59,949 nucleotides of DNA from Ruditapes philippinarum (lineage: Eukaryota): positions 124,001 to 183,949 of the forward strand of contig NW_026860434.1 in the NCBI RefSeq assembly GCF_026571515.1. Reading direction: 5' to 3'. Made by a program: the position numbers and the translations under genes. Below the pieces are notes generated by a model. That model was not told the DNA's origin. It worked only from the letters and a program-made list of their open reading frames with translations, and made no database searches. Shown piece by piece: positions 1,939-58,763 of this stretch. Numbering within the stretch: the first letter of the stretch is position 1; each line of letters begins with the position of its first letter.

Positions 1939-2004
1939 ATTTGCTTTATTTTTAGAATTTTATTTTAAGAAATCGTGATACCGTGACCGTTCCGCTTGCC
2001 TCTA

Positions 2005-18700: not shown

Positions 18701-21700
18701 AGAGTTATTGTGTCAAAAGATGAATAGAGCAAAGCGCCTTTCTTGGTGTAGAGAGAAAAGAAGGTCTAAAGTAGTAGGTGAATGGGATCGTGTGATATTT
18801 TTCTGATGAAAGTCAAGTTGTTAATAGGCAGTGACAATAGCGTTTTGATATGGAGGAAGCGTGACGAAGGGTATAGACCAGATTTATTGACTCCGAAATC
18901 TTTCCAATAACAAGAAGGTGATCAAAGTGATGATATGGGGTGTGTCACTTGGCATGGTGTTGGTACTCTAGCGAAAGTCAGTGGTAACATTAATGCTAAA
19001 AAATATGAGGAAATTTTAGAAGAAAATCTTTGGCCAGTTATTGCTCGTCATTTTCCCGATAACTCTTACACTTTTCAGGACGACAACGCACCTGTTCATC
19101 GTGCACACAGTGTCAATCTTTATAAGACCAGAAACGGTATTAAATCCATGTTTTGGCCAGCACAATCACCTGATTTAAACATAATTGAAAATATCTGGTT
19201 ATATATTAAACGAAAACTTTCAAACAGTACAGTTATCATAAACAGTGAGCAGATATTATTTGACAAAAATTTTCGGATCTGGCAAGAGATTACACCCGCC
19301 TATGTTCAAAGCCTGTACAAGTCTATACCACGGAGAATTATGCAGGTTATAAAGGTTCAAAGGGCATTTAACTAAGTATTAAGGTTAGTAAACCGAGTTT
19401 AAAAGTTAGTTTACTAGTTCAGTTAATGTTAAAACCAAGTTTTAAGTTATGTATATAAAAGACAGAAAATCCAATATGGCCGCCAAATCACGAATACTTT
19501 TTTCATCTTTCTGTAGCTTACAAAAATTTGAAAATAATTGGTGCTACATGAAATAATTGTTACTTCAAAAGGGGCCCTTTTGGGGGGGGGGTTTTCCCCC
19601 CCCCCCAAAATTGGGGGGGATCAAAATTTTAAAAAATTTTTTAAAAAATCAAAACAGTTTAAAAAAATCCTTGTCCCGAAATGCCCTGGACGTGGCCCCG
19701 GGGCCCCGGGCCCTTTGGCCCCTAAACTGATGGCAAAAAACCATCCCCTTTTTAAAAACCCCGCGGGGGGGGGGGGCCCCACAAAAAATTAAAACCCTTA
19801 ACCCTTTTCCCCCCTCCCCCATCCCCCCCAAAATTTTAAATTGGGTTTTTTTTAAAAGAAAAAAACCTTGGGGGTTTTTTTGGGTTTTTTCTCCCCGGGG
19901 GGGGGGGGAGAAAATTCCGGGACTCCTTTAAAAAGTTTGCTGGTTTCCCCGGTTTCCCCCTTTTTGGCCCAAAGGGTTCTTGGGTTTTTGGGGCCCCCTG
20001 GTTTACCCTTAAAAAAAGTTTAAAACCCCCTCTGAAAACCCGGGAAACCCGCCCCCCCCTCAGCCCAGCACCCTGGGGGGGGGGAAAAGGAAAAAAAAAT
20101 TAAATTTTTGGGGGAATTTTTAATTTTGTTTTTTAAAAAATTTATATAAAAAAAATTTTTTATAGACATTAAAAATTTTGGGGTTTATAAATTTAAAAGC
20201 CCCAAACCCCCAAAGGGTGCTGCCGGGAAAAAGTAAAATTTGGTTTGGGAAAATTTTAATCCTAAACCGGGATATAGGGCCTTTAAGGAAAAAACAAAGC
20301 CATACCTGCCCCACTTTATCTGAAAGGTTTATTTTTCACTAACCCAAATGCTGCAAATAAATCCCGTTATGTAAAAACAATTCCCCGGGGGCCCCCTGGT
20401 TTTCCCCCAAACCAAATTTAAAGGACCCCCTTTTTCAAACATTAAGAATATATAAAAAATATTAAATTTATATACTTTTTTTTTTTCCAACCAACAAACT
20501 CACCAAATAAAAATAGGCAAACGCTTCACTATAAAAGGAATTAATACACTCCCAACAAATATTCATGATCAGAGGCCTCGAAGGCTTACAAATTTACAAA
20601 ATACTTAAATTAACTTAACATTAAGCAATCAAATTGTATCCTGTTTCTAAAAACCCCTTGTTTCCTGAATTTTTTCCATCCAAATCTTTTTTGAAAAGTA
20701 AAAAATGATATTTTTTGGTTTGGGTTATTGGGCCCAGTGGGTAAATAATGTTTAATTTATTAAATTTTTTTCAATCCTCTTTACTATATTTCAACCCCCT
20801 TTGGCTACATCATCACTGAAGCATTAATACTTAGTAGGTAATAAATTTCAATAAAGTTTTTTTTTGAAATTAACAATCGTAAATTCAAAAGGTTTTTTTG
20901 AAAGATTTAAAAGTTATTAACATTTAGTTTAAAGTTTTTAACTATTAGAATTTTAATTTCCACAGTTAATTTTTTTAAAAATTTAAAAAGATTTTAAACT
21001 TTTTGAAAGTAAAGTTTGAAAAATATAAAACCCTTTAATTTTTTTGGGTTTAAAATTAAAATTGAAAAGTAGGGAGTTAAACATTGAAAAGTTTTTTGTA
21101 GAATAAACCCGGAAAAAAGTTTTGGTTAAAGGGAATTTTAAAAAACCTTGGGGTGTAGGGGACAAAAAACCCTTGGAAAGTTGTAAGGGTATTTAAAACC
21201 CTTTAAAGGGTTTTGGGAAAAATTTTAAAAATTGAATGTATGGTTAAAAAATAAAAAAACCTTGGGAAAAAGTATGTTTAAAAATTATATTTAAACCCTT
21301 TAATTTTAAAGAAAAACATAAAACCTTTAATGTAGTAAGATAAAACCTTGGGAAATTTTTAAAATATAAAACCCCTTGGAAAAAAATTTAAAAGGGTTAT
21401 TTAAAAATTGGGTGGGATGTAGAATATTTAAAACCCTTTGAAAATGTAGTATGTAGTATATAAAACCTTGAATGTATGAAAAACATAAAACCTTGAAAGT
21501 ATGTTTAGAAAAACCTTCATGTATGTAAATAATAAAACCTTTGATGTATTGTAGATATATAAATCCTTTGAATGTATAAAGACATAAACCTTTAAATGTA
21601 TGTATTGACAATGGAATGTAAAAAGGTTATAAGCTCTATTATTTAAATCACTTAAATTGTTTTAAGAAATTTCCATAAATTTTTATATAAATTAAGATAC

Positions 21701-24700
21701 ATTCTTTTTTTAAAAATGACCCTTTATTAAAAAATTTGAATTTAAATATCATGAACCACACACAATTTGAAGGCCAGACTAACATCTGTAAACAAAGTTG
21801 TGTTGACCACCAGAACGAAAAAAATAGTCTGAAAGAAATAATTCTGCACGGGAGATTTTTTTTAAGACGTTAAGGGAAAATAATTTCACCTGTGGCACAG
21901 TTTTGGGGATATAAATCACCGCCTCCCGTATAAACATTAACCATAAAATAACAATTATTTCATAAGCAAAAAAGACGATTGACCGCATTTACGTCAGAAG
22001 TGGTGGTTAAATTGAAATATGTTGTTTTGTTAGTGTCTCAAAGATAATGTGAGTAAGAGGAATTATGGGTAAGTTGGTTAATAGTTTGTTGGACAAGGAA
22101 ACCTTTTTTTATGAAATAATTTTTTGATTATTCTTTATAGGCCATCAACCAGTTTAAATTTTTTGTTTATTTTTTTTTTTAAATTATTACATGATTTTCA
22201 ACATTGTTAATGATTAATATCTCAAGTTAAAAACTGAGCAGAATTTAACATTTCTAAACCTAATATTTAACATGAAAAATCAATAATGTGAGTCATGAAT
22301 TAAATTCTTGATTGAAATAAAAAACTTGTTAAAATCTTTTTTTTTTATAAAGTTCGATTAGATTAAAATACATTATTAAATGATTTAAATATTTGTGGCC
22401 ATAGTAACAGCATATACCACAGATTAGATTAATATGTCACACAATAAGGACAAGTTTTTTGTTTTTCAATTCAAAATATTTCAATATTGCCATATTTCAT
22501 TATCTAACAACACTATTTTTTATAAATTTTCTATTCAAAATATATCAATATTGCCATATATTTCATTATCTAACAACACTATTTTTTTTATAAATTTTCT
22601 ATTTAAAATATATCAATATTGCCATATATTTCATTATCTAACAACACTATTTTTTAATTTTTTATTTAAAAAAAATATCAATTTTTGCCCCCTATTTTTC
22701 CCTTTTAAAACCAAAAAATGATCAAGAAAAAAAATTCCAACTTTTGGGTTTTTCATATGTTTTCCCTTTCATTGCCCGATGGGATGGGTTTACAAATGTT
22801 TTTAAAATTCCCGGGGTTCTATAAATTGATTTTACAGCGGGAAAAAATTTAAAACCATGAAACCAAAAGACCCGCTTTGGAGCCCGGGTTTCCCGACAGG
22901 GTCAAAACCGCAGGCGGAAAAATTTTCCCATCAACCCACATAAAGTATTCCCCCTCATTTCCAAAGCCCCGTATGGGTTTTTTTGTTTCCCTCGTATTTT
23001 TGTCCTTGGAAAATTGGGGGAAAATCACCAAAAGACCCGTTTTTTATTTTAGAAATTTCATTTTTGGAAAGGGGGGGCCCAGTTTTTCGGCCTCTGACCC
23101 AAAATCGATAAAAGGGAATTGCTCCTAACTACTGCAGTAGGATCGCTTGCAATTGTGTTTGAAGTGCTTAATATAACTCGTGACATATGCAGCGGAAAAC
23201 CATGGGTCGACCTTGACCTGGATTCAGCATTAGTTGTTTGGATAAATGAAATACCCACACTTTCCGTAACGTTTGCTATAAGCCTTTGCCACAGTGAACC
23301 AATCAGCTATTTCCAGCTAACAAAATGTTTGATTGTAATAACATCTGTTATTTTACGCATTGTTGTCCCTCTTGTTCGTCTATATTTAGAACAAGGGGAA
23401 GAATCTCTGCAAAACCCATTCAGGAAATCTATTTATAAATTTGTGACAACTGTTGGATTATGTTTGGCATTGTGTGGAGCAGTAACAATTTTTACTTTCA
23501 CTCATGTTATTGCACTGGATGAGAGACAATTCAAATTTAAAATGCCGCACGAAATCTGGACTGGCAAATCATCTTTCGAGGAATACTTTGAAGATGTTGG
23601 TATTTATTTAAATCACAAAGACTTTAAAACATTCAAAGATGATGAAATATGGCTGAAACTAGCAGACATTGATGAATTTTATGGTGTTGACAGTATTAGT
23701 GTCAAGGTCACTTTTACTTTATCGTCTGATAGAAAAATTAAGAAACTAGTATTAAACAGTTATAATTCCACGGAGCAAAGATTCCGAGAATGTTATAATC
23801 TTGCCAAATCAGACAACGATGTGTATCAGTATTCATATGTAGAGAACTGTTCCTTTTCATTTATTACCTCAAAAGAATCCCAAGAGAAACTTTTGTTCAA
23901 ATTTGTTTTCCATCGTCCAAGAAGGCATCTTTTACTTGGTGACATCTTCTTTCATGTGAAAAATATAAAAAATTCTGTGTGCTATAATATTACAGGAAAC
24001 AATACTTATTTGTATGAGAAAATAAGGAACAAACCTACAGTTATTGGTCAAATATTGTATATGAAGCAGGAAACCAGTCTACGGTCAAGTCATAGACTTG
24101 TTCACCGAAATATATCATCTAACCAGTCTACAAACAGTCTTCTATTTGAAGCAGATCACTACATGAAAACAGCAGAAGAGATTTGGAAGACTGGTGTATA
24201 TGGCTGTGAATGCTCGGGAAAACATGGACCAACAACAGATGAAAACATAACATTGGCATGCTAATACACAGTTGCAGAAGAACACTTAACATACAAACAC
24301 CGAAATGTGAAATATGCAAATTAAAAACGTTAAATGCGAATAATTGCAAGAATAATTCACACTGTTTTAAAGAGGTTCAGTATAAACTCTGTCTGTTATA
24401 TGCATTGTGGTATAATTTTATAATCTGTTCTGTATCATGGTAAAATTGCTCTATCTGTTCTGACAGAAGACATTGAAATTAACTATGGATTGGTGTCAAG
24501 ATATATTTGACTGACTATAATGTGTCACAAAGTAGCACATGCTGAGTAAAACCCATTATTTCCTTCACAGATATACTTTATTCTTTAGATATATAACAAT
24601 TTTAGTATTTTTTATTACTTTTTTGTAAGGTCTGTCTTTTATTTGAAGTCATGGGTGTTAATAGCAATCAAGTGAAACTTTGACATATGTAATAGAAACT

Positions 24701-27700
24701 CACTGTAAATGAACATGCGAAATCATTTAGGAAGTCTCGAAAAAAAAAAGGTTATGACCTTTATTGAACAGCATCAACTTTTTAACAGTTATTTTACACG
24801 AGGTTTTAACATGTTTTGATGTAAAATATACATATGCACTTCCATGTACTCTGCTAATTAATCTATGTAGTTCTATATCAATATAAAATTCATTTCTTAC
24901 AAAAAAGATTTAAGAAAGATATTTGATATACAGTGAAATATGCTGAATATATATTTGAGCCGCGTCACGACAAAACCAACATAATGGGTTTGCGACCAGC
25001 ATGGATCCAGACCAGCCTACGCATCCGCGCAGTCTGATCAGGATCCATGCTGTTCGCTTATAAACCCTATAACAAGTAGAGAAACTGATAGCGAACAGCA
25101 TGAATCCTGATCAGACTGTGCGGATGAGCAGGCTGGTCTGGATCCATGCTGGTCGCAAACGCATTATGTTGGTTTTGTTGTGGCACGGCTCATTTGTCTT
25201 ATATATTGCTGATAAATGCTATATTAGTTTGATTAATAAATAAATGTACATAATTTTTTTTTCACATATCATGGCCAGTAATTTATTCTTATGTTAAATA
25301 TTCTGTCACAGTAGTATATAAAATTAGACAACTATGTAATTATATAGAGGATATTTGTTTAGTTCAGTGTAAGATAGGAATATATTTCACCAAGTGAGCA
25401 CCAAAAGGTATATTTCACGAGTGGCACAGCCACGAGTGAAATATGAACTTTTGTGTTCACAATGTGAAATATATTTCGATCTTACACTAAACTAAACAAA
25501 TTTTCTTTTTATTATATGCAAATAAACGTTTTAAAAAGACATTAAACCTAATACTGAATGAAAAGCGCGCCAAATAATAATACAACGTGACGTCATTTAC
25601 GACGTCACGTCATTAAGTTGGTACCCAGTACTGTGCACGCTGGTATTTCACTGAAACAACGTAAGGGGCTTAAATTCAAAAACAGTGAAATTATCAAAGT
25701 GGTAATTTCACTGCTTCAAACAGTGAAATTACCAGTTTTATATCACTGATATATTTCTATAAACCACCGAAAAGCATGTAATAAATGTGTAGTCTTAGAG
25801 TTTAAGACAAGGGAATTTTATTTCATATTCAGATATCAGGATTTGCACAAAAGATTATTATATTGTACATATAACTGCATGGAAATAAAATATAAAAACA
25901 GATTTTTCTTTGGTAAAATATACCTCTTCCCCGATATCTTGATATATTTTACCAAAGAAAAATTATAAATGGTTTTGCCCAGACTGAAAGGTGGACAAGC
26001 CCATTTAAGATATTTGAGTTGTAAATGTTTTAAAACTCTATCTTTCTTTCTTATATGATAAAATAAATATTTATCTGGAAAACTGATTAAACTGATCCAT
26101 AATGCATTGTAGATTTTTTAAGTATTAGTTGACTATCATTGTAAAAGCATACGCTCAGTGACGTGTAAGTCCAATCTGAAATACCGTACTTACTCAATAT
26201 AAAGTTTGCCGTTCATTTTCTGAAATACAGTATTTATTCCATATAAAAGTTACCATTCATTGATGAAGTGCTCTTTATTTTAGATTTTTTGTCTTCTCCA
26301 GAAAACATTCATTAGGTGTTACTTCTAAAATACTGTATTAATCTATATCAAAGTTGCTGTTCCCTGAAGAAGGGTAAATTTTGTTCTTCAAAAAATACGA
26401 ATTTATACAAGAACATAAGAAAACATAATGGCATCTCTGTTAATGACATCAAGTATTATTTTTTTTTATATTTTTGTTGTTGTTTTTTTTATTGGTTTTA
26501 CATCACACAAACACAGTATAGGTAAAACGGCAACTTTTCAGCTTTACTGGTGAAGGAAGACCTCGCGTACTCTGTTTAATGTACTCATCGTACTGTCAAT
26601 GCGCTAAAAATACAATTCAATGGCAACATATAACACAATTTAATGGCATCTATGTTCAATTACATCATACATATGTACTTAAACCAATTTTCTATAAGAG
26701 GGGGTGCTTATAAGAGGGTATATGGTTTACTTTCAGAATCTGCAAATAGCTTCAAATTTCACACGCTGGCACATGACCTTACACTTTCGGCTCATGTTAC
26801 AATACAAGAAGTTTCAACATCTCCACTACATATATAACAGAGATTATTATAAGTACTTGAGTCATATTTATATATAAAACAAAAAAAATCAAATCTACAT
26901 CATTAGCAATAAATACTTCAGAAAGGAAATTGGCTGGAGCTAAAAATAAACTTCCTGGCTGTGAAAAGTAAGTTTTTTGTTTAATTAACATAACATTCAC
27001 TATATATTTTTGTTTTTGTTATATAAAAAGAGGCCTGATATCAGATATGATCTGAGGCTGATATCTGCCTGTTTTATTTGCTTTGGTGGCTCAATATTTC
27101 ATGCCATAAATCTTAGTAATAATTGTAATTGAATAAAGTCTCCTTAAATAAATCACGATTTTGTGATCATAAATGAAAGTTGGTATAATATGCCATCATA
27201 ATACTGAATAATTAAAGCCGCATGCCTAAAGATGAGCCAAAATGTTTCAAGAAAATCCAACTTGAGAAAAATGTATGAAGATTTTAGAGAAAGTAAACTG
27301 ATACAAGATTCAAGTAGTAATTTACATGTTATGTGTGATTAATGACTGATTTTGCAGTTACATAATTTATCACATATTTCAACAGCTGCATTACTAACAC
27401 TGAGTATCTTACTTAGGGCTAATTTTGCATATTTTGATCACTTTTTGGTTACTTACGTAGATTATGTAATAGCATGACACAAGTTGTAAATTACTTTCTT
27501 TGCTCACTTAACAATATTTTGCTTTCAAATACATTTTCAAAAATTCATGAAAATTATCATGAATCTGGAGACACACTGTTTTAAAGCTGCATAAAATGGG
27601 AAACAAGAGGGCCATGATGGCCCCGAGGTCGCTCACCTGTATATAGCCCCCCCCCCCCCCAGGCCAATTTTTACCCAAGGGCTTTTATTTGAACAGACTT

Positions 27701-30700
27701 GGTAGACACCCATAAGAAGATGCTTCGTGCTAAACATCTAAGTTCTAGCTCATTGGGTTTTTTAAAAGAAGATTTTTTAAGTTTTAACTATACACATATA
27801 GTTAAAAACAATGACACCCCTGGGGCAGGGCCAGTTTTGACCCCCGGGCTTTTATTTGAACAAACTTTGTAGATATTTACTTAAAAATGTTTCATGTATA
27901 ATATTTAAACTCAAGCTATTTGGGTTTTTTCAAAGAAGATTTTTAACTTTTTGCTATACATATATAAGGAAAATCAATGACCCCCGGGGCGGGCCAGTTT
28001 TGACCCCAGGGCTTTTATTTGAACATACTTGGTAGACACCCATTAGAACATGTTTCATGCTAAATATCTTAGCTCTAGCTCTTTGAGTTCTTTAAAAGAA
28101 GATTTTTTAAGTTTTTACTATATGCAAATAGGGAAAATCAATGACCCCCTGGGGCGGGGCCAATTTTGACCCCAGGGCTTTTATTTGAACAAACTTGGTA
28201 GACACTCATTTGAAGATGTTTCATGTCAAATATCTTAGCTCTAGCTCTTTGGGTTCTTTTAAAGAAGATTTTTTAAGTTTTTACTATATGCATATAGGGA
28301 AAATCTATGACCCCTTGGACAGGGCCAATTTTGACCCCAGGGCTTTTATTTGAACAAACTTGGTAGACATTCACTAGAAGATGTTTCATGTCAAATATCT
28401 AAGCTCTAGCTCTTACGGTTCTTTAAAAGAAGATTTTTTAAGTTTTTACTATATGCATATAGGGAAAATCAATGACCCCCCGGGGCAGGGCCAATTTTGA
28501 CCCAAGGGCTTTTATTTGAACAAACTTGGTTGACACTCACTAGAAGATATTTCATGTCAAATATCTTAGCTCTAGCTCTTTGGGTTCTTTAAAAGAAGAT
28601 TTTTTTAGTTTTTACTATATGCATATAGGGAAAATCTATGACCCCCTGGGGCAGGGCCAATTTTGACCTCAGGGCTTTTATTTGAACAAACTTGGTAGAC
28701 ACTCATTAGAAGATGTTTCATGCTAAATATCTTAGCTCTAGCTCTTTGGGTTCTTTAAAAGAAGATTTTTTTTAAGTTTTTACTATATGCATATAGGGAA
28801 AATCAATGACCCCCTGGGGCGGGGCCAATTTTGACCCCAGGGCTTTTATTTGAACAAACTTGGTAGACATTCACTAGAAGATGTTTCATGTCAAATATCT
28901 AAGCTCTAGCTCTTACGGTTCTTTAAAAGAAGATATTTAAAGAATTTTCTTTCGGTTGCCATGGCAACCAGAGTTCTGCATGAAATGGAATTCTTTGAAC
29001 AATCTTGATAGAGCTTCATACAAAGAGTATTCCTGCCAAGTTTCATTAACATTGGCCTTGCGGTATCATAGAAGATGTCCTTTGAATATTTAAAATGTGG
29101 ACGGACGACAGACGACGGACGCCATTTGGTTGGCCATCCTAAAAGCTCACCTGCACTTTGTGCAAGGTGAGCTAAAAAACTCAAACATAACATAAACAGA
29201 TAAACTAATATTTTCAATGTTGATTGTTACAGATAGGAACTTTTCTCATAAAAAAACTTTTTTTTTTTTTCACCACTTAAAACCCCCACTTATAAAGGAT
29301 TTTAAGGCTTTTAAATTTTATTATTTTTTAATCAGTTTTATTTATCTTTTTTCCCCAAAATTTAAAAGCATATGTATACCAACTTCATCAAATCATTTTT
29401 TATAAATTACTGTATTCAGATGTGAAGAATATATATTAACTTTTTACTGTATGAGCATAATTGTGAAAAATAGCTGATTTCATTGAAAAGCCTCCTGTTA
29501 CAATTTCAAACTGCTTTGAAAATGTAAGAAAATGCTTCAATACTGATCAAACTTGGCACAAATGTTGACTGGACCATAGCCTTTTATTTCCTGTTACCAT
29601 GGCAATGGGAGACATCTCAAAATTACCAAATCAATATTTTGCGTTGATTTTTTCTATCAAAACTGATTTCAAAGTGCTGCAACTTCTCATTGGTTTGAGA
29701 TAGAGTCAAAGGCTTTTCAGCTTTGGTTAACACATTATGTTAAGATCAACCTTAAGTCATTTTTAGCCTCCGCAAGTCTATAAAATTTTCTTGGAGATGA
29801 GGAGGGGGGCTGCTGACCCCATCCAAACCTCTAAGCAGAAGGGGGCACATCATATTTTTAAAACAAAAACAAGTGTTTGGGCCAAATATGACATTTTTTC
29901 ACTATTTGAAGCCTCAAAAAAGAGGGGGGGGGGGGGGGGGCGGGTGAAGAGCAGTCAAAACACAACTATAAGGGTAAAGGTTTAATGAAGTTTCTTTGAC
30001 TGTAAACCACAAACTCAGGACTTGAACTTGCACATTTGCAGCTCACTTATGACCTAAGTCAGTCCACGTAATCAGACAGCATCACTATACTTGTGTATAT
30101 TTCAAAATGTTTACTGTAAATTCACTTAATTTTGTGGGCATGTAATTCCGTGATTTTGTCTCAAAGAATATTTTTGTGAGTTCTTAAATTTGTGGATTGT
30201 TTATTTATTTTCAAAAGGTAAATTATAAATAATGTACAGCAAAATAATTTTACAGCAGATGAAATAAAATTCCGTTTGATCTTAAATTTGTGGATTGACC
30301 TATACACGAAAATTAGTGCCCTAGGAATAATAATGATTTTGCAGTATATCTTCCATTATAGTACATAAGCACAGGCTGTATTTAGCTCTATTATCCATGC
30401 ATTTAATATACTAAACTTCCCTTGTAATTAAAAAACAATTTACATAAACTGAATGTTCTTTCATTTTCTGATGCTAAATTAAAATCAACCCTTTCTATGA
30501 TAAATATCTTAAGAGGACTTGTCCGTCTTTAAAGAGGATTTTTCTTTAAGATAAGGCATGTTTTCAATAAGTATTTCAAATATTGAAAAAAAATATATAT
30601 ATATATCAACATTTGGATATTCAATTTATATAAAATGTTGCTAGAAAAAATACAAGACTACCGTACATACAAGACTTACAGAATATAAAGCTGTATCTAA

Positions 30701-33700
30701 TGAAATATTTCTATAAAATTAATAAACAGTAAAATTATATTGTTTCCATATTATTATGGACCATTTTTAAAAGAAAGAGTTGTAATAAACAATAACACAC
30801 ATAAATATTGTAAGTATACAGAAAAAAATGTTCCAGAAAAAAATATTATTCCAAATATTTTTTATTTATAGCATGATTTAGTGCATGTACCATTCGTTTT
30901 TAAGGCAATTTACTAACATATTTGTTTGGAAATATTCTTCTTTAAAATTCAAACAATATTTTTACAGCAGATATATAGCTTTATACACTTTAATGAACAC
31001 CAATAAATTACAACTCAACAAAGTTATTTATTTAAAACACTAAATAATAACTTCAAAGAGAAAGACCTTGTGTTCACATTCCTACACATCATGAATCATG
31101 TGTCATTAGTGGTAATAAAGCAATATTTTACAAAATTAATTACATTAATCTGTCATCCCAGTGAATATTGTATCTTAATATATTTAGTAAAAGAGACAAA
31201 ATATTAAATTACAGCTTTTTGGTCTCAATACCTTTACAGCACCAAATTTGTATAATGGACTGGTCTGCTTTAAAATTTGGAACAGTCCTTCTCACTTCAA
31301 GGGATTTCAATATAGAAGCAGATAGAAATGAACTTGCCCAAATTTCTTTCATTTCTGGAAAAAATTCTCATTTTTTAAGGATCATCATCACCTTAGTGCA
31401 AAACTGGTAAACTCCTATTAAAAATTACAAGGACTTAACCAGTTTTACTGCGCCAAAATTGATGATATGAAATTATATGAAAGCAAAGGTGCGACCAGAT
31501 CCGAAGCAAGATTTGTGCCAGCTAATCTTGCTCTTGGGCCTTGTTGTTGATGGTAGAAATAATTTGCAAGCACGCTGAAGGTAAATTACCCATAAATAAC
31601 ACCAAGTCAAGTTTTTTAAAACTATAATTCTAAATTTAAAGTTAAAATTTTACAGCAGAAAAAGGCCTGGTGATAGATGTATAATATTATAGATATTTAT
31701 TGGCTTAAAAGGAATCAATGATCAAGTTTTCTATAATCAGGACATTTTTAAGTAGCCATGAGTGGTAGGTACCTGGCTTGAAATTTTAGATAAATTTAAA
31801 AATTCCAGATAAAGACCTTTTAATAAATCTCAAACTTTTAAATCCTAGATTAATTGTTTAATGGTGTCAGAAGGGAAATGATCAACTTAGTGTGTAAAAT
31901 CATAGTCTCCCGTCAACAGATGAAGTTAACAGAGATAGATCAGCTCTGCGGAGAAGAGGAATAAAATTTGGAAAGTATATATGCATAACTTCATCATATA
32001 ATTTAGATAGGTATGAAATAATTTGGGATATATAAAACACCCGGAAAAAACTTTTCTTAATTGAAAAATTTTTTTTTTTAAAACATTATATAATTTACAA
32101 GAAATCTTCCAAATCTACAAAATATCAAACTACTTGGAAAAGCATGATGTAAAAATCTGTGCATGATTTGGTAAACTGTAACCGGTACTTTAAATAAATT
32201 GGAAAAGGAAAAATTAATAATGATTTGGAACAGTATCCTTTGATTTGGATGTAGCAGACATAACTAAACTGATAAAAACTTTAATTTTTTTATTTAATTT
32301 GAAACAAAACAACAACATCAAGACATCTGGATACATTGCATAATAATGGCATAGGGATGTTAATCTGTATTTGACCTTCGATCTGTCAGGTAATTCATTA
32401 ATTTTATCATTACACAATGTTTATTATGCTCATCTAGATTAAATACGGACAAGTATTTGCCTATATATTATAACAAACCCATCTAATTAGCTATTAATAT
32501 TATGTATCCAGCTCATTACACTGTCTCGATATAGACATATACTAACTTTCATAGGACGGGGACGTTTATGGACAGATATTGACATATAAATATTTATTTC
32601 GGCTCATATACCTATCACGGTTTATATACAGATGTTTTATAAAAAATTGACATTCATGTCAAACTGTGCTGTCTGGAATTACTTCGGAAACGAAACGAAT
32701 GTGTTAATTTTTTTCATACATGTGAACAAAATTTAAATGATCTATGGAGGATAGCCTCGAGGGATGAATTGTGTTTGAAACAATGCATAAACTTAAATGC
32801 TTTGTTTTTGAACATAGTTTTGCATCAATATGTAATGGTAATTATATATTTTTTGAGAAAAATAAATAATACTTTTTGACAATCAAAATTTAATTGTTAT
32901 TGAGATTTTCAACAACTTACTTCTGACTTTATGCTTTTAAAAAACAAACAAACAATCTTTTCCATTTTTAAATGGGTTTTATGTCACACAAGACTGTTAA
33001 CATCAGATGGCAACTTTTCAACTTTACTGTTGGAGGAAGACCTCAGTGCATTTTTTCAGGCACAAGGTGGGGGAGATTTACGAAAGAATCCAATGTCCCT
33101 GGCAGGATTCTAACCCACGCTAGTGGTTGTAAGTGTCAAAGGCCTTAGCTACTTGGCCACAGATATCCCATTAAAACATATGGATTGATGCTATTGAAAC
33201 TTGAGGTGTCACTACATGGTGGTACTATGCCTGAATTTGCAGTGAAAGAACCTACAAGACAGCATACTATTGCAAAACTTTGAAACACAAAAAAGTATGA
33301 TTATGCAAAAAAATCATTCCGTAGTTTTACTCAGGTGCCTACTTGTTGACTAATATAAAGCATGGAGGAGCACCTGAGGTCTGATTCCCTCCACCAGTAA
33401 ACCTGGAAAGTTGCCATATTACATTAACAAAGTTGGACTGACTTTAAACCCAAACAAAAATTTCTGATAATCACTTGCATTTGAGGCCCAATTTTTCTCC
33501 AATTCTTCAATAAATGGGCTAAACTTTATCATATTTCAGCTTTTACACAACACTATTTCAACTCAATAAATCTAAAGATCTTTTTAATACAGTATTGCAC
33601 TGAATTCGGAATAAAACCAGGTTTCACGCAGGGTGGAGTGACTTTGTCGATGATAAAGTCAGCGGCAATCGAAATCCTGCAAATCAATCTGACCTAATCG

Positions 33701-36700
33701 CTACTGATAAGACATGACAACTTTGTCAATATAAAAGAAAAGACAGTGCACTAAATGTTCACCAAAACAAATATTCTGTAAACAGCAACCATATTTAATT
33801 AACGTCTTGAAACTCCAACGAGGTTCCATTTTTAATCTTATAGGCACTTATGTTTTGTGATATGGTCTTTTTCTTCTTGGTGAACATTGAGTATTAATCA
33901 TTTGGTTTGTGAGATTTTTTTTCTTTTAAGGTGATAATATCTTCACTATGCATGTTTATTTAAAAGTTTTTTTATCATAGTCACTGGCTACCATCTGAAC
34001 CTGTTGCTCCTAAAAACATTTGCTGCAAAATTTAAAGTGTTAGGTAGACATCATTCTTTTGACCCTTAAACTAATAATCATGTTCTTTAATGAACTTTTT
34101 CATTTTTTTTAAGGGTACTTATTAGTAAATATGGTTAAAAAGCTGGATAATTGCGCGTGAGAAATACTTAAACCCACTTAAATAATAATAATCAAATAGG
34201 AAAAAAAAACCTTACATTTACTCCAATTTATTTCCTTTTTTACAACAATATAAGTTCATTGTAGATTCATTTTAATAACTAAATTATCAACAACAAAAGA
34301 CAACAACAAAAGAACATCAAGAATCTACTTGACAAAGTCTTACAAAAAGGAAAATAATTTAAGTAATGTTTTAACAACAGGAGTTACGGCACTTGAAAAT
34401 TAATCATTTATTTGTTTCAAAACACAAGTAATTATGTTGATCCAATTTCATATTTTTCCACAGATTTGATAGAACAATCCTACCATTAAGGACAGCACAA
34501 AATAATGTTCGATTACCCAGCAAAAATGATCTCTCAGCAGTTTCAAAATAAAATGTATAGAACAATTACTGGTAATTACCTCCGGTGACAATTGAAATTA
34601 CTTTCCAAATACCTCGCTTGACAATTGAAATTCATTTCCAATAATCTCCCTTGACAATTGAGATTCATTTCCAATTACCTCCCTTGACAATTGAAATTCA
34701 TCTCCAATTACCTCCCTTGACAATTGAAATTTATTTCCAATTACCTCCCTTTACAATTGAAAATTCATTTCTTTTCATGGGCACTAATGAAACATACGAG
34801 AAACCTCTGAAAAATTACAATGAGTATTTGACTGGATGAAAATTTTTCTATCCTTAATTTGGTTTAAAAAAAAATAGAAATAATAATGGACTACCCCTTT
34901 AAAAAAACACATATTTCATACACATAATGTGTTGTCATGGTAACAAAATCAGCATGTCATCTACTTGTGATATAAATAACTAATAGGAATCAATAGAGAA
35001 CTATATGTATTATATCCATACAAAGGAAATTCTCCCTCAGTGTTCATTATAATATCTAATAAAAATATCAAACAACACTATTTCTGAAAGCTCTTTTAAA
35101 ACACTTTACAGCAACTCATCTCCAGATCCATGCTTTTAGTTTGTGTTGTTGTTTTTTAAGTGTTCCAAACAGAAAAATTCTCATCAAATGTCTGAATAAA
35201 AAGATTTAAAGCTGCAAGTCTCCAGACGAGTAAAAACTAGAAATGTGTCCATAGGACACGGATGCCCCCACACGCCACTGTTCTGTCAATCTTATGACTC
35301 TAAGGTCAAATATTTTTTGGACTACATGTGCCACAAGTTGAAAACTAAAAATCAACAAAGGGCCATAATTCTGTTAAATTTGGTCGCAGCAAAAATTCCT
35401 TCCTTTACTACCATCTACACATTAAGGTTGTTCATCCCTGGAAGTTTAAGCAAAATCTGCCATCCGGTTTAAGAGGAGTTGCGTTCACAAAATTTCTACA
35501 TAGTATGTAGTGAAAAAATCAACAAAGGGCCATAATTCTGTTAAATTTGGTCGCAGCAAAAATTCCTTCCTTTCGGGACGTACGGACATACCAACTTTTG
35601 ATGTTTATGAGGCAAATCAGCTCATAAACACCACCTGGACCAACGTCCATAAGCAAAATAAGCTCATAAAAACAAAAAAATAGCTCTTAATTTGAATTTT
35701 ATGAGTTTTTGTTCTTTATTTAACTACGGAATGAAGCTCATAATAATCAAATGTTTGCTCGGACAGACAGACGGACGGACAGACGTACGGACACTCAGAC
35801 GGACAAGTGCAACGCTATATGCTCCCACTCTGTGGGGGCATAAAAATTCAAGAAAGTCAATTTTGTGAAAAGACAAAGAGTTGGAAAATTTATATATATT
35901 TGTACTTATTTTAACACCTGAAATATTCTTGTTAAGTCCTTGAAAATCTTTTTACTCATCTAGCTGTATGTATGTAGCTTAAAGGTAGAATGCTACAGCC
36001 TCTGTTTGAATGCATGCTGCGTATTTCATCAAAGTCCAATAAAAAATCAAATTTATGCCGTTATAATGTTCAAGAGAAACACAAAACAAAACCTCTTGCA
36101 TATCAGTAGATATATGACATTAGAAATAATTTGCAAAGTTAACCAAAAAGTTCTCAAAGATAATGCAAGTTACAAATGGATTTAACACCTTAAACCATCT
36201 TGACGGCTTTTTTCTGCTTTAAAAATGGATCTTATAAAAATAAAAAGATTCAAAAGATCAAATGACATTTGAATCTAAAAATATATCTCTATAAAATTCT
36301 ATTATACAGCTTGCGGTGAAACGATTCAGAAGAACATTAATTTAAATTGACTATCAATATAGGGTTTAGGAATCACAAACAAATCTCTAATCTATTCTGG
36401 CCTAACTTTTCTGATAAGCAAAATGTGTTAGGTCTTTTTATTATTAGTAACTTACTTTACCAGGAGAGTTTAATTTCTGCGATATAAAAATTGTTAAAAC
36501 ATGGAAAGGTATGTTAAATTTATGTTTTTTATTTCAAATAAAAACATAAAATAAACATGTTTATTGAGGTTTTTTGACATGACGAGACTGGAAATATTTT
36601 TTCGAGATAAATGCTCAGTTTGATGAAGGTCTAGATCAGTAACTTGTGTGCAAAATTTTAGATCATTTGCTCTCTCGGTTTATCTAGGGTAATTATTCAA

Positions 36701-39700
36701 GCAGTGAAAAATGACCCAAAATTGAAAAGCGTTTAAACGCTTTTCACTCAAATCATATCAAAAATGTCACAAAAATAGGCTTTTCAATTCATTTCTGAGT
36801 AAATAGTAAATTTCTTAATTATTTTTTCATGTCTTCCTGTTTTACGTGCCCCAGCTGATCTGTGTAAAAAAAATTTTTTTTATGATTTTAGGCTTTTGAA
36901 CCTCAGTGGAGTTCCTTTAAACATAAAATTTTGTCTTTAAGAGATAGGTAATCTAATTTAATTTTGTAAATATAGAATATAGAATATAGATAGGTACCTA
37001 ATTCAATTTTATTGATATAGATTCAAGTTAGGTATCTAATTCTAACTGGAAATTTAATTAATCCTCAAATTCCTTAATTTAACAGCTCATCCTGACAACT
37101 TTCACCTACTGGTTCATATTGAGGATACGCCTGATCTATGGGTAGACACATATTCAAGTTGACTTTAGTTTAGGCTAAATGTTATTAGAATATGATATCC
37201 CAAAATTCAATTCCGTGTTTACTAGAGAAATCTGTATATTCCTGGTGAAAAAGATATTTTCAAAATTTTTCAAAAAGACATCAGTATTATCTAATTTTAT
37301 ACATTTAATTTTATTTCTTTCAACGTCAAATTATAAATAAATGAATCATTTAAATCTCCTTTTTTGCCAGTACTTACTATAGTTGTCATCCATAGAAATG
37401 ATATATATGTATCATTGATATTTCTCTGTCGATCAATAACGGATACACATTTGAAAAAATCGATTATTTTGATTTATTATTTTAATGTCTATGAATTATG
37501 AAAATTCATCCAAAAAATATACAAAAACAGGTGGCCATGTCTAACACTAAGCTGTTGTTATATAATTGAAACATTACATAGCGGTGATGACAAAAAATGG
37601 TTAAGAAAAAAATCATGCAAAGAACATTTATAAACTGGACACAACATATTTGTATGAGCAAAACATATATCTTACTAAAATCATTTAAACAGGTATGAAA
37701 GTGATTATATATACAAGAAATTAGGAGTATGTATCAATATATTGGTGTATCCAAATTATTTGTCATCCGATATCAATGTATCGTCAATATACTTTGCAAT
37801 GAATCAATGACAGCTCTAGTTCTTACCAGATTTTCAACAAGAAACTACCAATTGCCGAAATCTCTACCTAAATTATTCAATTTTGAAAAATTACTGATGA
37901 ATGGATCAATATTTATTGTTATAAAACAAAAATGTTTCACAAAATATGGGTCACACCCATGACTTAAACTGGTCAATCAATGATTTTTAAAGTTAATAAA
38001 CTATCTACTGGGATTATCAGACAGACTTCCTTTTCAATTACTAGTCAAATCTGTGGAAAAATAGAGAGAACAAGAATCCCTACAGAAAGCCCAACCCAGC
38101 AAAATATAAAATGTTGCTGGCTCGGTTACATGGAGCCTGTTCATGACTACAATGTCATGTTCTTCTAAATGAAACAACATGCTCATATAAAAAGTTTATG
38201 ATTTGATCAATCCACTCTGCAAATATGAAATATCACATTTCTTTTTATTGTACTGTACTTATTTAGAAAATGAAATCTTTGACAGGATAATAGATATATT
38301 TAACATCCAAAAACCTTCTAAAAAAAAAAAGCTTTAACGAAAGCAGATACATTGAAAGTGTTGTAAATATTCAAATGAAAAAAAAACAAAAAACGTCACA
38401 ATTTACTTAGATTTTTTTTCTTTTACAGACAAGGCCCACCTGACTTAAGGACGCACCAACAATTCAAACAGCCATGTCAGGAAGAAAGAAAAATGGGCAG
38501 ATAACTCCAATAGAGAAAATGGAGATGCAGGAAGTGTGTGCATATAGGCCCAAGTCAGGCAGCATGGTCTCAAGCATTCCGTGCTGCAGAACACTCCATG
38601 ACAAATTTTGTTTTAAACTGGTTGTGTTCTTGGCCGTATTTGTTCTCGATGCCGTGGATCTTGTCAGTGATTGGCTACTTTATGCAGATGTCGCTGGTGC
38701 CGAGGAAGGGCTGGTTTACGGACCACCGGAGGATGTGATACGCTACCTGCTACTCACATTCTCAATAATCGGTTCATTAACATTCACTTTTGAAATCATA
38801 AATTTATGGTGGGAAATTTTCCGCGATGATCCTTGGATCGACGTTGACCTACTTTCAGCCATTACTGTCTGGATAGAGGACGTCCCCCAAATAACAATCA
38901 ACGTTGTCATCGTAGCTTGTCGTGAAGAGGCAATAAGTTATTTTCAGCTTGTAAAGGCGTCTGTGATAATAATAGGTGCGGTCATCAGGATAATTGTCTC
39001 TTTAGTACGGTATTGCGGTAAAAAGGCTCGGCATGACCTTCAGTGTGCCCGTGTCAATCCTGAATCGAGGCGGCACGTTGTTTATAGAGTATTTATTATG
39101 ATAGCTCTCATACTAACACTAGGAGGCGCTATAACTATCTTTATGTTTACACAGTCTGAACGAAATCCCGATGGAAGTTTGAATTTCAAAATCCCTCACA
39201 GTGTGGTCGAGGGCGAGTATGATGATCAGAAATATTTCCAGGATGTAAACATCTTCTTTGCTCACGAGCTTTTTGACTGGGACTCAACTTCAGTCACTTC
39301 TGCCGAACAGTTAAACCTTGTCCGATTGTTCAAAATCAATGATATAAAAAATGAAAAGATTGACAGAACAATCAAAATACAATATGACACGGCAACTGGT
39401 CCGACGAAAGTAGTAATATGGGAAAGTGACGTAAGTGGCTCTATGCAAGTCAAGGAATGCTTCACAATGGATCGGAGCGGTAAAACAATTACCATCGGAA
39501 CAAACTGTGCGACGTACATTTCTGCTCCATTTAACCAATATGTGCTGAAATTCCACTATATCAAACCGTCGGTCCCAAGTCTTATATTTGGTGACATTAA
39601 ATATAACATCAAAGTCCAATACAGCTCTTCTACAAATTGTGAAACCCCCAACTTTGTCATCAATAACAACCTCAAGGACAGATCCAAAAACAGTAAAGTT

Positions 39701-42700
39701 GCCGCCCTTCATTACTTCAGGGTAGGAAAAGGTACTAACCAGACAAATCATGTGATCCAATCCGGTGCAAATCCGGTGGAATTTTACCATTCCAAGAGTC
39801 TTGAAGATATCATCGATGTATGGAAGACTGGTTTTGCTTACTGCAAGAGTACCGGAAGTCAAGCGCCACATCTGGACACTTCTATAGCAGTATTGTGTAA
39901 TTAACTCCTCAACTTTAATCATTCCTTAATCATAATAATTGGATTGATTGATTTTTTAACTGATTGATTGAATGATTGATTGATTGACTGTTTGATTGAT
40001 TGATTGATTAATAAAATCATATTCTTTTGAACATTATCATTAATTTTATGAAAAAATTTATTTCAAGTTACCTTGAATATTTTTATAGCAGTTACAGCAC
40101 TTTTTAAGTCATAATTTTATTAATTAATTTATTTTTTTAATCAATTGTAAATATTTTATTCAACTATCCAAGCAGTATCTTTTGAGATAATTTTTTACAT
40201 TTTCATTGTACATGTATAATGTATGACATATAAACTAGTGCTGTTGTCATAGAAAAATCGCCTATCATTCAATACTTTTCCGATACTGACATAGGAACTT
40301 TAAGACAAACATTCTATTAATATATTTTTACTTATGAAATTGGCATGTGTAAGACAATTTCATGAGTATAAGTGCTATTCTCATTACTTTTATTGTCAGA
40401 GCAACTTGTTTTCATTAGTATAAGTGCTATTTTGATTACCTTTATCACCATGGCAACTTCTCATTTTCATGAGTATATGTGCTTTTTTAATTACATGTAC
40501 CTTTATGAATATCATCATGGCAACTTCTTATTTTCTTGAGTATAAATGCTATTTTAATTACTTTTATTATCATGGCAACTTCTCATTTTCATGAGTATAA
40601 GTTTTATTTTAATTACTTTTATCACCATGACAACTTCTTATTTTCATGAGTATATGTGCTATTTTTTATTACTTTTATCACCATGGCAACTTCTCATTTT
40701 CATGAGTATACATGTAAGTGCTATTTAAATTACTTTTATCATCATGGCAACTTCACATTTGCATGAACTTAAGTGTTATTTTAATTATTTTTATCACCAT
40801 GGCAACTTTTCGATTTCATGAGTATAAGTGCTAATTTTATTACTTTTAACACACAATGGAAACTTTTTGTTTTCTGTACAATGGCAAGTTCATGAAATAA
40901 TTCTTTTCTCTTTTTTGAAATGGCATGTTCCTTAGAACTAATACCTTTCTATTTCAAATGGTTAGATTACATAAGTTATTACTCATTCCTATACATTGTA
41001 ATGATAATCATTCCCATTTCATCTTTAAAATAGCAAGATCTTCAGAGAAATTCTCATTTTCATTACAATGGCGCATTTATCTGAGCTATTCCCATTTCAT
41101 TAAAATGGCAGTTTTATGTGAGCTGCTCTCCATTGATTACAAGGGCAAGATTTAATGAGAGCTTTTCTCTTTTACATAACAATGGCAAGTTTATGAGAGG
41201 TATTCTCATATTTTTTACAATGGCAAGTTTATGAGAGGTATTCTCATTTTTTTTACAATGGCAAGTATATGAGAGGTATTCTCATTTTTTTTTACAATGG
41301 CAAGTATATGAGAGGTATTCTCATTTTTTACAATGGCAAGTTTATGAGAGGTATTCTTATTTTTTTTTAACAATTGCAAGTTTATGAGAGCTATTCTCAT
41401 TTCTTACAATGGCAAGTTTATAATATATATTCTCATTTTTTTACAATCACACAATCACAAGTTTATGGGAGCTACTCTCAATTTTTTACAATGGCAAGTT
41501 TATGAGAGCTACTCTCATTATTTTACAATGGCAAGTGAATGAGAGATACTGTAATATTTTGACTATGGCAAGTTTATGAGAGCTACTCTCATTATTTTAC
41601 AATGGCAAGTGAATGAGAGATACTGTAATATTTTTTCAATGGCCAGTTAATAAGAGGTACTCTAAATAATTTACAATGTCAAGTTTATGAAAGCCACTCT
41701 CTTTTTATGGAAAGTTTATGAAAGCTACATGCACTTTCATTATCTTTACACCAAAAAGTTTATGAGGGCTACATTCATTTTCTTAACAATGGCAAGTTTA
41801 TGAGAGCTACTTTCATTTCCTTAGAATGGAAAGTTTATGATAGCTACCGGTACTTTTATTCTTTACAATTTAAAAAATTATGCGAGCTACTAAATTATAA
41901 TTTTATGAAAGCTACATTTACTTTCATTTGTTTACCATGACAAGTTAATGAGGACTACATTTATTTTCTTTACAGTGGCGAGTTCATGAGAATTATTCTC
42001 AAAATGGCTATAGTAGTTCATGAAAACCATTTGTGATATTTCATTACAATTGCAGTCAATCATAGAAGCATAATAAAACTACTTCAATTATCATTTGCTT
42101 GTGTTTTATCCCATCAATGACATGACCAGTTTTTATTTGTTTGGGTTGTCAGACCAAACAAATAATGGTAGCGAAATTTCAGACTCTAATGCTGTTGATT
42201 GCTTCCCTTTATACGTGGGTTGTCCCAATATTCTGTGACAATATTGTTTAAAAGCTAAATAAAACGGGTACGAATTTGATATTTTAATATGTTATAAACC
42301 CTTATAATTGAAACATTTTCGCAAATTTACATAGAACAAGATATGTTTGTAAAACATGTATGCCCCCTATCAGCAGCCAATTAGTCATGTGATAAGGTTA
42401 TTATGCATGACTTCTGACCCAGTGATCAAACAATTAATAAGGGTTATCAAGTATCTACTGGTCATGACCTTGACCTTTGACCCCTTGACCAAAAACTCAA
42501 TAGGGGTCATCTGCTGATCACGACCAATCATCATACAAAGTTTGAAGTTCCTAGGCCTAAGCGTTTTTAGTTAATTGATCAGAAACCGTTTTTACCTACA
42601 AGGTCAATGTGACCTTGACCTTTGACCCCCTTGACCCCAAAATCAATAGGGGTCATCTGCTGGTCATGACCAATCACCATGCCAAGTTTGAAGTTCCTAG

Positions 42701-52979: not shown

Positions 52980-52997
52980 CTGAAATTCAAAAACAAA

Positions 52998-57147: not shown

Positions 57148-57367
57148 NNNNNNNNNNNNNNNNNNNNNNNNNNNNNNNNNNNNNNNNNNNNNNNNNNNNN
57201 NNNNNNNNNNNNNNNNNNNNNNNNNNNNNNNNNNNNNNNNNNNNNNNNNNNNNNNNNNNNNNNNNNNNNNNNNNNNNNNNNNNNNNNNNNNNNNNNNNNN
57301 NNNNNNNNNNNNNNNNNNNNNNNNNNNNNNNNNNNNNNNNNNNNNNNNNNNNNNNNNNNNNNNNNNN
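57148..57367. other. Assembly gap (220 N)
   Basis: Run of N. Confidence 1.
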
Positions 57368-58564: not shown

Positions 58565-58763
58565 AAAAAGTACTTCAGTATTTAAGTATCAGTAACACCA
58601 CCACCGCAAAAAGAGGACATTAATATTCACTTGAACGGAAACTTGCTCCAGACTAAAAAAATAAACTTTCAACTTGTGGAGTGACATATCAGAGACATAC
58701 GGTAGATATCTACATCTGTGGACATATTCAGGAAATTTTTCTGAAACAAGTTTAATTATATTT

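What the first reader, a model, noticed from the sequence alone, without database searches (positions are those of the whole stretch)
22857..39904. Two diverged paralogs of an uncharacterised 5-TM + ectodomain protein nested antisense inside NLE1
Seen: two + strand genes, each coded in one exon, lie within the 30-kb stretch between minus-strand NLE1 exons 47701 and 17594. They share blocks over their full length: PWIDVDLLSAITVWIEDVPQ / PWVDLDLDSALVVWINEIPT; CREEAISYFQLVK / CHSEPISYFQLTK; GAITIFMFT...FKIPH / GAVTIFTFT...FKMPH; KYFQDVNIFFAH / EYFEDVGIYLNH; KFHYIKP...LIFGDI / KFVFHRP...LLLGDI; VWKTGFAYCKSTGSQAPHLDTSIAVLC / IWKTGVYGCECSGKHGPTTDENITLAC. Both have a splice acceptor 20-45 nt before the ATG. 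Heavy divergence with open frames implies an old duplication under selection (inference). I recognise no named family with this overall architecture. It could be a lineage-restricted receptor, channel or scramblase-like family living in a ribosome-biogenesis gene.
Basis: partly seen in the sequence, partly recalled or inferred. Interest (0 to 1): 0.8.

Follow-up and report, generated by a model that had tools for sequence, protein, structure and literature searches.

The report
Two old clam membrane-protein paralogs inside Notchless
Two anciently duplicated genes of an uncharacterised membrane-protein family found across molluscs, annelids, nemerteans and flatworms sit antisense inside the Manila clam Notchless (NLE1) gene; both are real, already-annotated genes, and the apparent truncation of one is an assembly error.

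Summary
The observation largely holds. Copy A (38474-39904, 476 aa) is intact. Copy B is an open frame at 23113-24264 (383 codons), 27% identical to A (E 7e-47).

B's first ~77 codons lie in a 3.5-kb homopolymer-inflated, corrupted assembly stretch (19560-23117). Contigs from four public runs break at exactly 23118, and the two that span the gap carry 371 nt of other sequence where the window has 539.

Both genes are already in RefSeq for Ruditapes philippinarum as uncharacterised proteins. Their relatives carry Pfam PF27623. The family is not mollusc-restricted: it also occurs in annelids, a nemertean and flatworms. The A/B duplication probably predates the split of oysters and scallops from clams. 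In B, 12 of 13 coding variants are synonymous.

Both genes lie between Notchless exons for residues 277-310 (47.7 kb) and 405-459 (17.6 kb). About 94 NLE1 residues are unaccounted for, so a single 30-kb intron is not shown. Function is unknown, and nesting is ordinary.

Another first-stage note of this scan on this same window (s1-804482) flagged the same XK-like motifs.

The parts
38474..39904 (+). Paralog A coding sequence: 476 aa in a single coding exon, intact from ATG to stop.
   Evidence: ORF. It is 97% identical to transcript-sized Logan and JGI contigs and 76% identical to Mercenaria LOC128547303. The same 476-aa protein is in NCBI on a 183,949-nt contig.
38606..39154 (+). Paralog A membrane domain, aa 45-227. 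It has five TM helices (45-74, 87-117, 124-149, 156-180, 196-227) and a short helix at 183-191. Conserved charged residues are D62, D66 and W67 (TM1), E107 and N110 (TM2), E135, D136, P138 and Q139 (TM3), C149, R150 and E151, and K161 and R172 (TM4).
   Evidence: AF2 model, pLDDT 84, pTM 0.78. Conservation from alignment A1.
39155..39901 (+). Paralog A ectodomain, aa 228-476. It is beta-rich, with invariant C329, C345 and C457 and near-invariant C389 and C475. No known fold matches.
38413..38428 (+). Candidate 3' splice site (polypyrimidine tract plus AG) 45 nt upstream of the paralog A ATG. This is sequence-level evidence only.
   Evidence: Sequence.
23113..24264 (+). Paralog B open frame: 383 codons plus stop. 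It corresponds to residues ~78-460 of its 460-aa orthologues.
   Evidence: Contigs from four runs cover it at high identity, and 12 of 13 variants are synonymous.
22939..23112 (+). Garbled remnant of the paralog B N-terminus (TM1 region). It is in the same frame, has 2 stops, and is 5 codons longer than in the orthologue.
   Evidence: tblastn of P0083 reaches back to 22939 in the ORF's frame. Translation.
19560..23117 (.). Corrupted, homopolymer-inflated assembly stretch. It may also hide the missing NLE1 exons.
   Evidence: Homopolymer fraction is 0.5-0.8. Stretch 22700-23110 is unique in the genome. All contigs break at 22578 and 23118, with 371 nt in place of 539. DNA depth is near zero at 19891-20087 and 22846-23042.
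18782..18871 (+). First coding exon of RefSeq model XP_060607938.1 (LOC132760064, 412 aa) for paralog B. It lies just upstream of a Tc1/mariner transposase fragment and is probably an annotation patch over the corrupted stretch.
   Evidence: tblastn of P0247 gives 100% identity over aa 1-30. The neighbouring transposase-like ORF is at 18935-19375. The Tc1-like reading is by eye.
52758..53060 (-). Open frame holding a Notchless (NLE1) exon, residues ~53-127.
   Evidence: Match to PDB NLE1 chains, E 8e-29.
51899..52087 (-). Open frame holding an NLE1 WD40 exon.
48369..48653 (-). Open frame holding an NLE1 WD40 exon.
47651..47836 (-). Open frame holding the NLE1 exon for residues 277-310. This is the last host exon seen upstream of the nested genes.
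   Evidence: Match to PDB NLE1, E 1.5e-16.
17357..17638 (-). Open frame holding the NLE1 exon for residues 405-459. This is the first host exon seen downstream of the nested genes.
   Evidence: Match to PDB NLE1 residues 405-459.
16569..16640 (-). Open frame holding the last NLE1 coding exon.

Best explanation
The window holds two real, expressed, anciently duplicated genes (A at 38.5 kb, B at 23.1 kb) of an uncharacterised membrane-glycoprotein family catalogued as Pfam PF27623. The family occurs across spiralian animals. Both genes lie on the same strand, 14 kb apart, antisense inside the Notchless (NLE1) gene of Ruditapes philippinarum. The apparent 5' truncation of B is an assembly artefact, not biology.

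Inferred anatomy of each protein:
- The N-terminus is cytosolic.
- Five TM helices bury a conserved acidic/polar cluster on TM1 (D..xDW) and TM3 (W-I-E-D-V-P-Q ... C-R-E-E).
- A disulfide-stabilised extracellular beta-rich domain of about 250 aa has an unrecognised fold.

Most likely mechanism (inferred, low confidence): the ectodomain binds an extracellular partner, and the charged helix bundle acts as a polar conduit or lipid-perturbing module, as in the N-terminal domain of XKR scramblases. Paralog B has a subfamily-wide altered TM3 motif (W-[LI]-[NED]-E-[IV]-P-T, C-H-[SN]-E). This suggests a diverged or partner role.

The gene pair, its selection, the nesting and the artefact are shown. 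Topology and function are inferred. The confidence of 0.8 applies to the shown part; the mechanism alone would rate about 0.2.
For: - Paralogy: E 7e-47.
- Separate orthologue sets for A (82 hits) and B (13 hits, about 460 aa, all with TM1).
- Family size and range: 315 representative clusters. Taxa named include bivalves, gastropods, Sepia, the annelids Owenia, Paralvinella and Dimorphilus, the nemertean Lineus, and the flatworms Cichlidogyrus, Schistosoma and Paragonimus.
- Tree: the B clade has support 100 and is sister to an oyster/scallop clade (89).
- Selection: 12 of 13 coding variants in B are synonymous and the stop codon is kept; binomial P is about 1e-7.
- Expression: the B ORF is held at 0.63-0.70 of sampled words in four small, probably-RNA runs from four studies. 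X7 contigs cover only ORF plus 3' flank.
- Artefact.
- Host gene.
- Structure.
- Positive-inside distribution and conserved ectodomain cysteines.
Against: - No functional data exist for any family member.
- The RNA status of runs X7 and X8 is the tool's guess, and all runs are contigs rather than reads.
- About 94 NLE1 residues are unaccounted for, so the exact intron or introns hosting the genes are unknown.
- The true 371-nt sequence of B's 5' end was not seen.
- In Mya, A-type and B-type genes sit on contigs of different length, so linkage of the pair is not universal.
Confidence: 0.8

Rival explanations
1. Copy B is a 5'-truncated pseudogene, or a chimeric gene that borrows a transposon-derived first exon, as in the 412-aa RefSeq model.
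For: The window has in-frame stops upstream of 23113 and no start codon. The RefSeq model joins 18782-18871 to about 23116.
Against: - Contigs from four runs replace 22579-23117 with 371 nt of different sequence.
- The rest of the ORF is open for 383 codons, and 12 of 13 of its variants are synonymous.
- All orthologues have a normal TM1.
- The broken stretch has sequencing-noise composition.
Confidence: 0.07
2. The membrane domain is a true single-repeat homologue of the XK-related (XKR/CED-8) scramblase N-terminal domain, so the family is a lipid scramblase or a scramblase subunit.
For: - Atlas feature hit 'XK-related', score 0.85.
- PF09815 is the top recurrent sub-threshold family: 2 of 43 and 4 of 87 members, best E 1.3e-3. 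P0176 residues 292-379 map to XK model positions 122-207.
- The two families share acidic residues on TM1 and an E-[DS]-x-P-Q motif on TM3 (PMC8298096).
Against: - hhalign P is 0.09-0.15.
- There is no PDB sequence hit.
- No window protein hits PF09815.
- The domain has five TM helices rather than eight plus two.
- There is no inner-leaflet helix between TM2 and TM3.
- The C-terminus is extracellular, so no caspase-gated cytosolic tail is possible.
Confidence: 0.2
3. The block is misassembled into NLE1, and the nesting is an artefact of a bad join hidden in the corrupted stretch.
For: The contig contains 3.5 kb of noise. About 94 NLE1 residues are missing. The assembly has 15,874 contigs.
Against: NLE1 exons on both sides are on the same strand and in the correct order: residues 53-127, then 277-310, then the gap holding both genes, then 405-459, then the C-terminus. 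Independent contigs join 22217-22578 to 23118-24592.
Confidence: 0.08
4. The two ORFs are retrocopies or transposon cargo that landed in an intron.
For: Each has a single coding exon. Many repeats surround them.
Against: - A and B are ancient and each has orthologues across bivalves.
- A-type and B-type genes also share a scaffold in the scallops Mizuhopecten (LOC110446047 and LOC110446049) and Ylistrum.
- Another paralogue in this genome is also coded in a single frame.
- No transposon protein domains were found in them.
Confidence: 0.03

Closest known systems
Pfam PF27623 proteins (for example Mercenaria LOC128547303 and LOC123533606, Ruditapes LOC132760064)
   Same: Full-length homology at E down to 0, with the same 5-TM plus ectodomain layout and the same motifs. 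The window's own proteins are already in NCBI.
   Different: Nothing differs; these are the same family. The family's name and description could not be read here because PF27623 is absent from the local Pfam copy. Every source name seen is 'uncharacterized' or 'hypothetical'.
XK-related (XKR8, XKR9, CED-8) lipid scramblases, N-terminal domain
   Different: XKR proteins have two repeats, eight TM helices plus two half-inserted helices, and a cytosolic caspase-cleaved C-terminus. This family has five TM helices, no helix between TM2 and TM3, and an extracellular C-terminal domain. The sequence relationship is not significant.
Nested intronic genes in animal genomes
   Same: Compact genes, each with a single coding exon, on the opposite strand inside a long intronic region of a housekeeping gene (NLE1).
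   Different: Here it is a pair of ancient paralogues. Whether the nesting is conserved in other molluscs could not be tested.

Membership tests
Pfam PF27623 (uncharacterised spiralian 5-TM plus ectodomain family) | Full-length similarity to proteins that carry the PF27623 annotation | tested here: met
   For copy A, 81 of 82 hits carry PF27623.1, with E from 0 to 3e-48. For copy B, all 13 hits carry it.
Pfam PF27623 (uncharacterised spiralian 5-TM plus ectodomain family) | Direct score of the window proteins against the PF27623 HMM above its gathering threshold | not testable with these tools
   The model is not in the local Pfam library.
XK-related protein (PF09815) | Pfam HMM match above the gathering score (24.8 bits) | tested here: not met
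   Neither window protein matches. Relatives reach only E 1.3e-3 to 3.6e-3, about 17 bits, in about 6 of 129 members.
XK-related protein (PF09815) | Two structurally related repeats, each with 4 TM helices plus a half-inserted helix (PMC8298096) | tested here: not met
   The AF2 model has one bundle of 5 TM helices followed by an ectodomain.
XK-related protein (PF09815) | Conserved acidic residues on TM1 and TM3 of the N-terminal domain (PMC8298096) | tested here: met
   D62 and D66 on TM1 and E135 and D136 on TM3 are at least 90% conserved. The motif aligns with FLESAPQL of XKR7-like and clam XKR proteins.
XK-related protein (PF09815) | Significant profile or fold similarity to XKR8 or XKR9 | tested here: inconclusive
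Tetraspanin (PF00335) | Pfam match above threshold, with 4 TM helices and a Cys-rich large loop between TM3 and TM4 | tested here: not met
   E 0.56, 10 bits against a cut-off of 32. The protein has 5 TM helices and a C-terminal ectodomain.
Notchless / NLE1 (host gene) | NLE-domain and WD40 exons that match NLE1 in order along one strand | tested here: met
   Residues 53-127, 277-310 and 405-459 match PDB NLE1 chains. The exons were searched one by one and were not joined.
Nested (intronic, antisense) gene | Host exons on the opposite strand on both sides of the gene | tested here: met
   Host exons lie at 47.7 kb and 17.6 kb, and both ORFs lie between them on the + strand. The exact intron is unknown because 94 host residues are missing.

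The most novel reading that the evidence does not exclude
The family is a single-repeat relative of the XKR scramblase N-terminal domain fused to an extracellular domain with a new fold. The conserved A/B neighbour pair would then work as a heteromer that rebuilds the two-repeat XKR architecture, with an acidic half and an altered half. That would be a spiralian lipid-scrambling or ion-conducting receptor controlled from outside the cell instead of by caspase cleavage.
Probability: 0.12. Interest if true: 0.7.

Novelty: already known. Interest (0 to 1): 0.3.

Why it matters
The genes and the family are already catalogued in RefSeq and Pfam, and nesting inside a housekeeping gene is common. The finding itself is therefore ordinary.

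Four things are still useful:
1. The RefSeq model of LOC132760064 is probably wrong at its 5' end. A 3.5-kb stretch of noise in the reference hides TM1, and probably also two WD40 repeats of NLE1.
2. The family spans several spiralian phyla, including parasitic flatworms. It has an ancient, often linked A/B pair and no known function.
3. Its 250-aa ectodomain folds with high confidence yet matches nothing in the PDB.
4. The acidic motifs on TM1 and TM3 give a concrete, testable link to XKR scramblases.

Tried and rejected
- The local Pfam library gave only tetraspanin at E 0.56.
- A profile search of PDB sequences found nothing relevant.
- Foldseek on the whole model and on the ectodomain found nothing at E<=1e-3.
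- The Atlas search on the ectodomain gave no usable hit.
- hhalign of the family against Limulus XKR7-like, a clam XKR ORF and a small alignment of clam XKR fragments was not significant.
- The last word-index search, used to collect XKR proteins, returned only one because the clam XKR is much longer than the 350-aa query.
- Regex and a home-made WD40 HMM found no NLE1 exons for residues 311-404 between 17.6 and 47.7 kb. The HMM was built from short repeats copied from the window's own exons.
- tblastn found no separate upstream exon for copy B, only the garbled in-frame remnant.
- A Pfam NLE-domain search of the genome did not hit this contig.
- Paper searches for PF27623 and for the LOC identifiers found nothing.
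Synteny in other molluscs and dN/dS against orthologue CDS could therefore not be done.
- The careful tree did not finish, so the quick tree (SH-aLRT only) is reported.
- NLE1 exons were searched one by one by reference. The joined spliced model was not built or searched.
- The N run at 57148-57367 was left alone.
Full report
**What is in the sequence**

Copy A is a clean 476-codon ATG ORF at 38474-39904(+). A polypyrimidine tract plus AG lies 45 nt upstream of its ATG.

Copy B is an open frame at 23113-24264(+), 383 codons plus a stop.

The in-frame sequence upstream of 23113 also has stops.

**Why copy B looks truncated**

Copy B has true orthologues of about 460 aa: P0083 at 85%, Mercenaria LOC123533606 at 76%, and Mya at 52%. 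All of them carry an N-terminal TM1. tblastn of P0083 runs back to window 22939 in the same frame as the ORF. A garbled remnant of the N-terminus is therefore present.

From 19560 to 23117 the window has 50-80% of its bases in homopolymer runs of 3 or more, against 20-30% elsewhere. By eye it reads like sequencing stutter. Stretch 22700-23110 is unique in the genome, so it is not a repeat family.

Contigs from four public runs were laid on 19300-25200. All break at exactly 23118. Two of them, X3 record 11 and X8 record 25, also lie on 22217/22258-22578. They carry 371 nt of their own between the two parts, where the window has 539 nt. DNA depth is near zero at 19891-20087 and 22846-23042.

The truncation is therefore an assembly artefact.

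RefSeq's 412-aa model of this gene is XP_060607938.1, LOC132760064, from Ruditapes philippinarum. It sits on a contig of the window's exact length, 183,949 nt. It bridges the noise by joining an exon at 18782-18871 to about 23116. By eye, that exon belongs to the Tc1/mariner fragment next to it (ORF 18935-19375).

**Are they genes?**

Of 13 listed coding variants in copy B among the laid contigs, 12 are synonymous. The stop-codon variant keeps a stop. With 21% synonymous sites, the binomial P is about 1e-7.

The B ORF is held at 0.63-0.70 of sampled words by four small contig sets that the tool guesses are RNA, from four studies. One of them, X7, covers only ORF plus 3' flank. All runs are contigs, so this expression evidence is suggestive rather than proof.

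Copy A is 97-98% identical to complete ORFs on 1.5-2.0 kb Logan and JGI contigs. It is itself in NCBI.

**Family and age**

All close relatives carry the precomputed Pfam accession PF27623, which is absent from the local Pfam copy.

An exhaustive profile search found 315 representative clusters at E<=1e-3. The 30 I sampled for source names came from:
- bivalves, gastropods and a cephalopod;
- three annelids (Owenia, Paralvinella, Dimorphilus);
- a nemertean (Lineus);
- flatworms (Cichlidogyrus, Schistosoma, Paragonimus).

No source gives any of them a functional name.

A quick ML tree places the B clade (support 100, long stem) as sister to an oyster/scallop clade (89). Both are apart from the heterodont A clade (98). 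The A/B duplication therefore probably predates the split of Pteriomorphia from Heterodonta.

In the scallops Mizuhopecten (LOC110446047 and LOC110446049) and Ylistrum, A-type and B-type genes share one scaffold. In Mercenaria they share a chromosome. In Mya they sit on contigs of different length.

**Structure**

The AF2 model of A has pLDDT 84 and pTM 0.78. It shows five TM helices, a short helix at 183-191, and a beta-rich C-terminal domain.

Basic residues sit at the N-terminus and in the TM4-TM5 loop. The C-terminal domain has invariant cysteines. In B it also has seven of the protein's eight N-x-S/T sites. These features argue for an N-in, C-out topology. This topology is an inference.

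Residues conserved at 90% or more include D62, D66 and W67 (TM1), E107 and N110 (TM2), E135, D136, P138 and Q139 (TM3), C149, R150 and E151, and K161 and R172.

Subfamily B changes W-I-E-D-V-P-Q to W-[LI]-[NED]-E-[IV]-P-T, and C-R-E-E to C-H-[SN]-E, throughout the subfamily.

**The XKR lead**

Evidence for a link:
- An Atlas feature hit of 0.85.
- PF09815 is the most recurrent sub-threshold Pfam family in two member sets: 2 of 43 and 4 of 87, best E 1.3e-3. P0176 residues 292-379 map to XK model positions 122-207.
- XKR proteins are characterised by conserved acidic residues on TM1 and on a hydrophilic TM3 (PMC8298096).
- Clam and Limulus XKR proteins carry F-L-E-[SA]-A-P-Q-L where this family has W-I-E-D-V-P-Q-I.

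Evidence against a link:
- hhalign aligns only that motif, at P 0.09-0.15.
- A PDB sequence-profile search does not see XKR8 or XKR9.
- The architecture differs: 5 TM helices rather than 8 plus 2, and an extracellular C-terminus.

Membership is not established. 'Works like' remains a hypothesis.

**Host gene**

Minus-strand frames match PDB Notchless chains as follows:

| Window frame | NLE1 residues | Support |
|---|---|---|
| 52758-53060 | 53-127 | E 8e-29 |
| 47651-47836 | 277-310 | E 1.5e-16 |
| 17357-17638 | 405-459 | |

Further WD40 exons lie at 51.9, 50.8 and 48.4-48.6 kb, and the last coding exon is at 16.6 kb.

Both nested genes lie between the 47.7-kb and 17.6-kb exons, on the opposite strand. 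No exon for NLE1 residues 311-404 is visible anywhere in the window. The corrupted 3.5 kb is the likely hiding place. 'One 30-kb intron' is therefore unproven.

**Verdict**

The finding is a real, ancient, selected gene pair of a catalogued but functionally unknown spiralian family, nested in NLE1. The gene model given for copy B was wrong because the reference assembly is corrupted there.

The finding is ordinary as a genome feature. The open biology is the family's function, its unmatched ectodomain fold and the XKR-like membrane motif.

Noticed in passing
window 19560-23117: A 3.5-kb stretch of homopolymer-inflated noise in the reference contig. It garbles the 5' end of LOC132760064 and probably hides NLE1 exons for residues 311-404. 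Public contigs do not match it.
   Followed up: yes
window 18782-19375 (+): A Tc1/mariner-type transposase fragment (146-aa ORF at 18935-19375). The RefSeq model of copy B takes its first 30 codons from 18782-18871, just upstream.
   Followed up: partly
window 24950-25200, also 58759-58917 and about 11540-11960: A very high-copy element, with summed contig depth of 1e5-1e6 in all four runs. Its frames share the peptide ...WSGSMLVANPLCWFCRD... at three places in the window.
   Followed up: no
window 57432-58588 (-): LINE-like ORFs with endonuclease and reverse-transcriptase motifs by eye, next to the masked N run at 57148-57367.
   Followed up: no
window 2-724 and 1708-1959 (-): A THAP-type zinc-finger ORF and a transposase-like ORF that runs off the left end of the window. 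Identified by eye and not scanned.
   Followed up: no
window 16850-17290 (-) and 42400-44100 (-): Tandem repeats that read as repeated peptides: SVLNFEIFPKMVLSE units between the last two NLE1 exons, and RTLRPRNFKLGMVIGHDQQMTPIDFGVKGSKVKV units near 43 kb.
   Followed up: no
G000 contigs C13714:749216-750535, C10007:7343-8672, C3758:186072-187426, C1501:30951-32504: Four further paralogues of the family in this genome. The C13714 paralogue is a single frame (50% identity to A). The others show frameshifts or stops, which could mean pseudogenes or more assembly errors.
   Followed up: partly
window 39311-39922 (-): A 203-aa ORF antisense to the copy A coding sequence. It is most likely a chance open frame opposite a real gene.
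   Followed up: no
L020 (G000:C8585:131334-132290) and G000:C12839:427342-428259: Two long clam proteins, each in a single open frame of over 800 codons in the genome search, with a full XK-related domain but no E-S-A-P-Q motif. A cluster of at least three XKR genes lies on contig C5249.
   Followed up: partly
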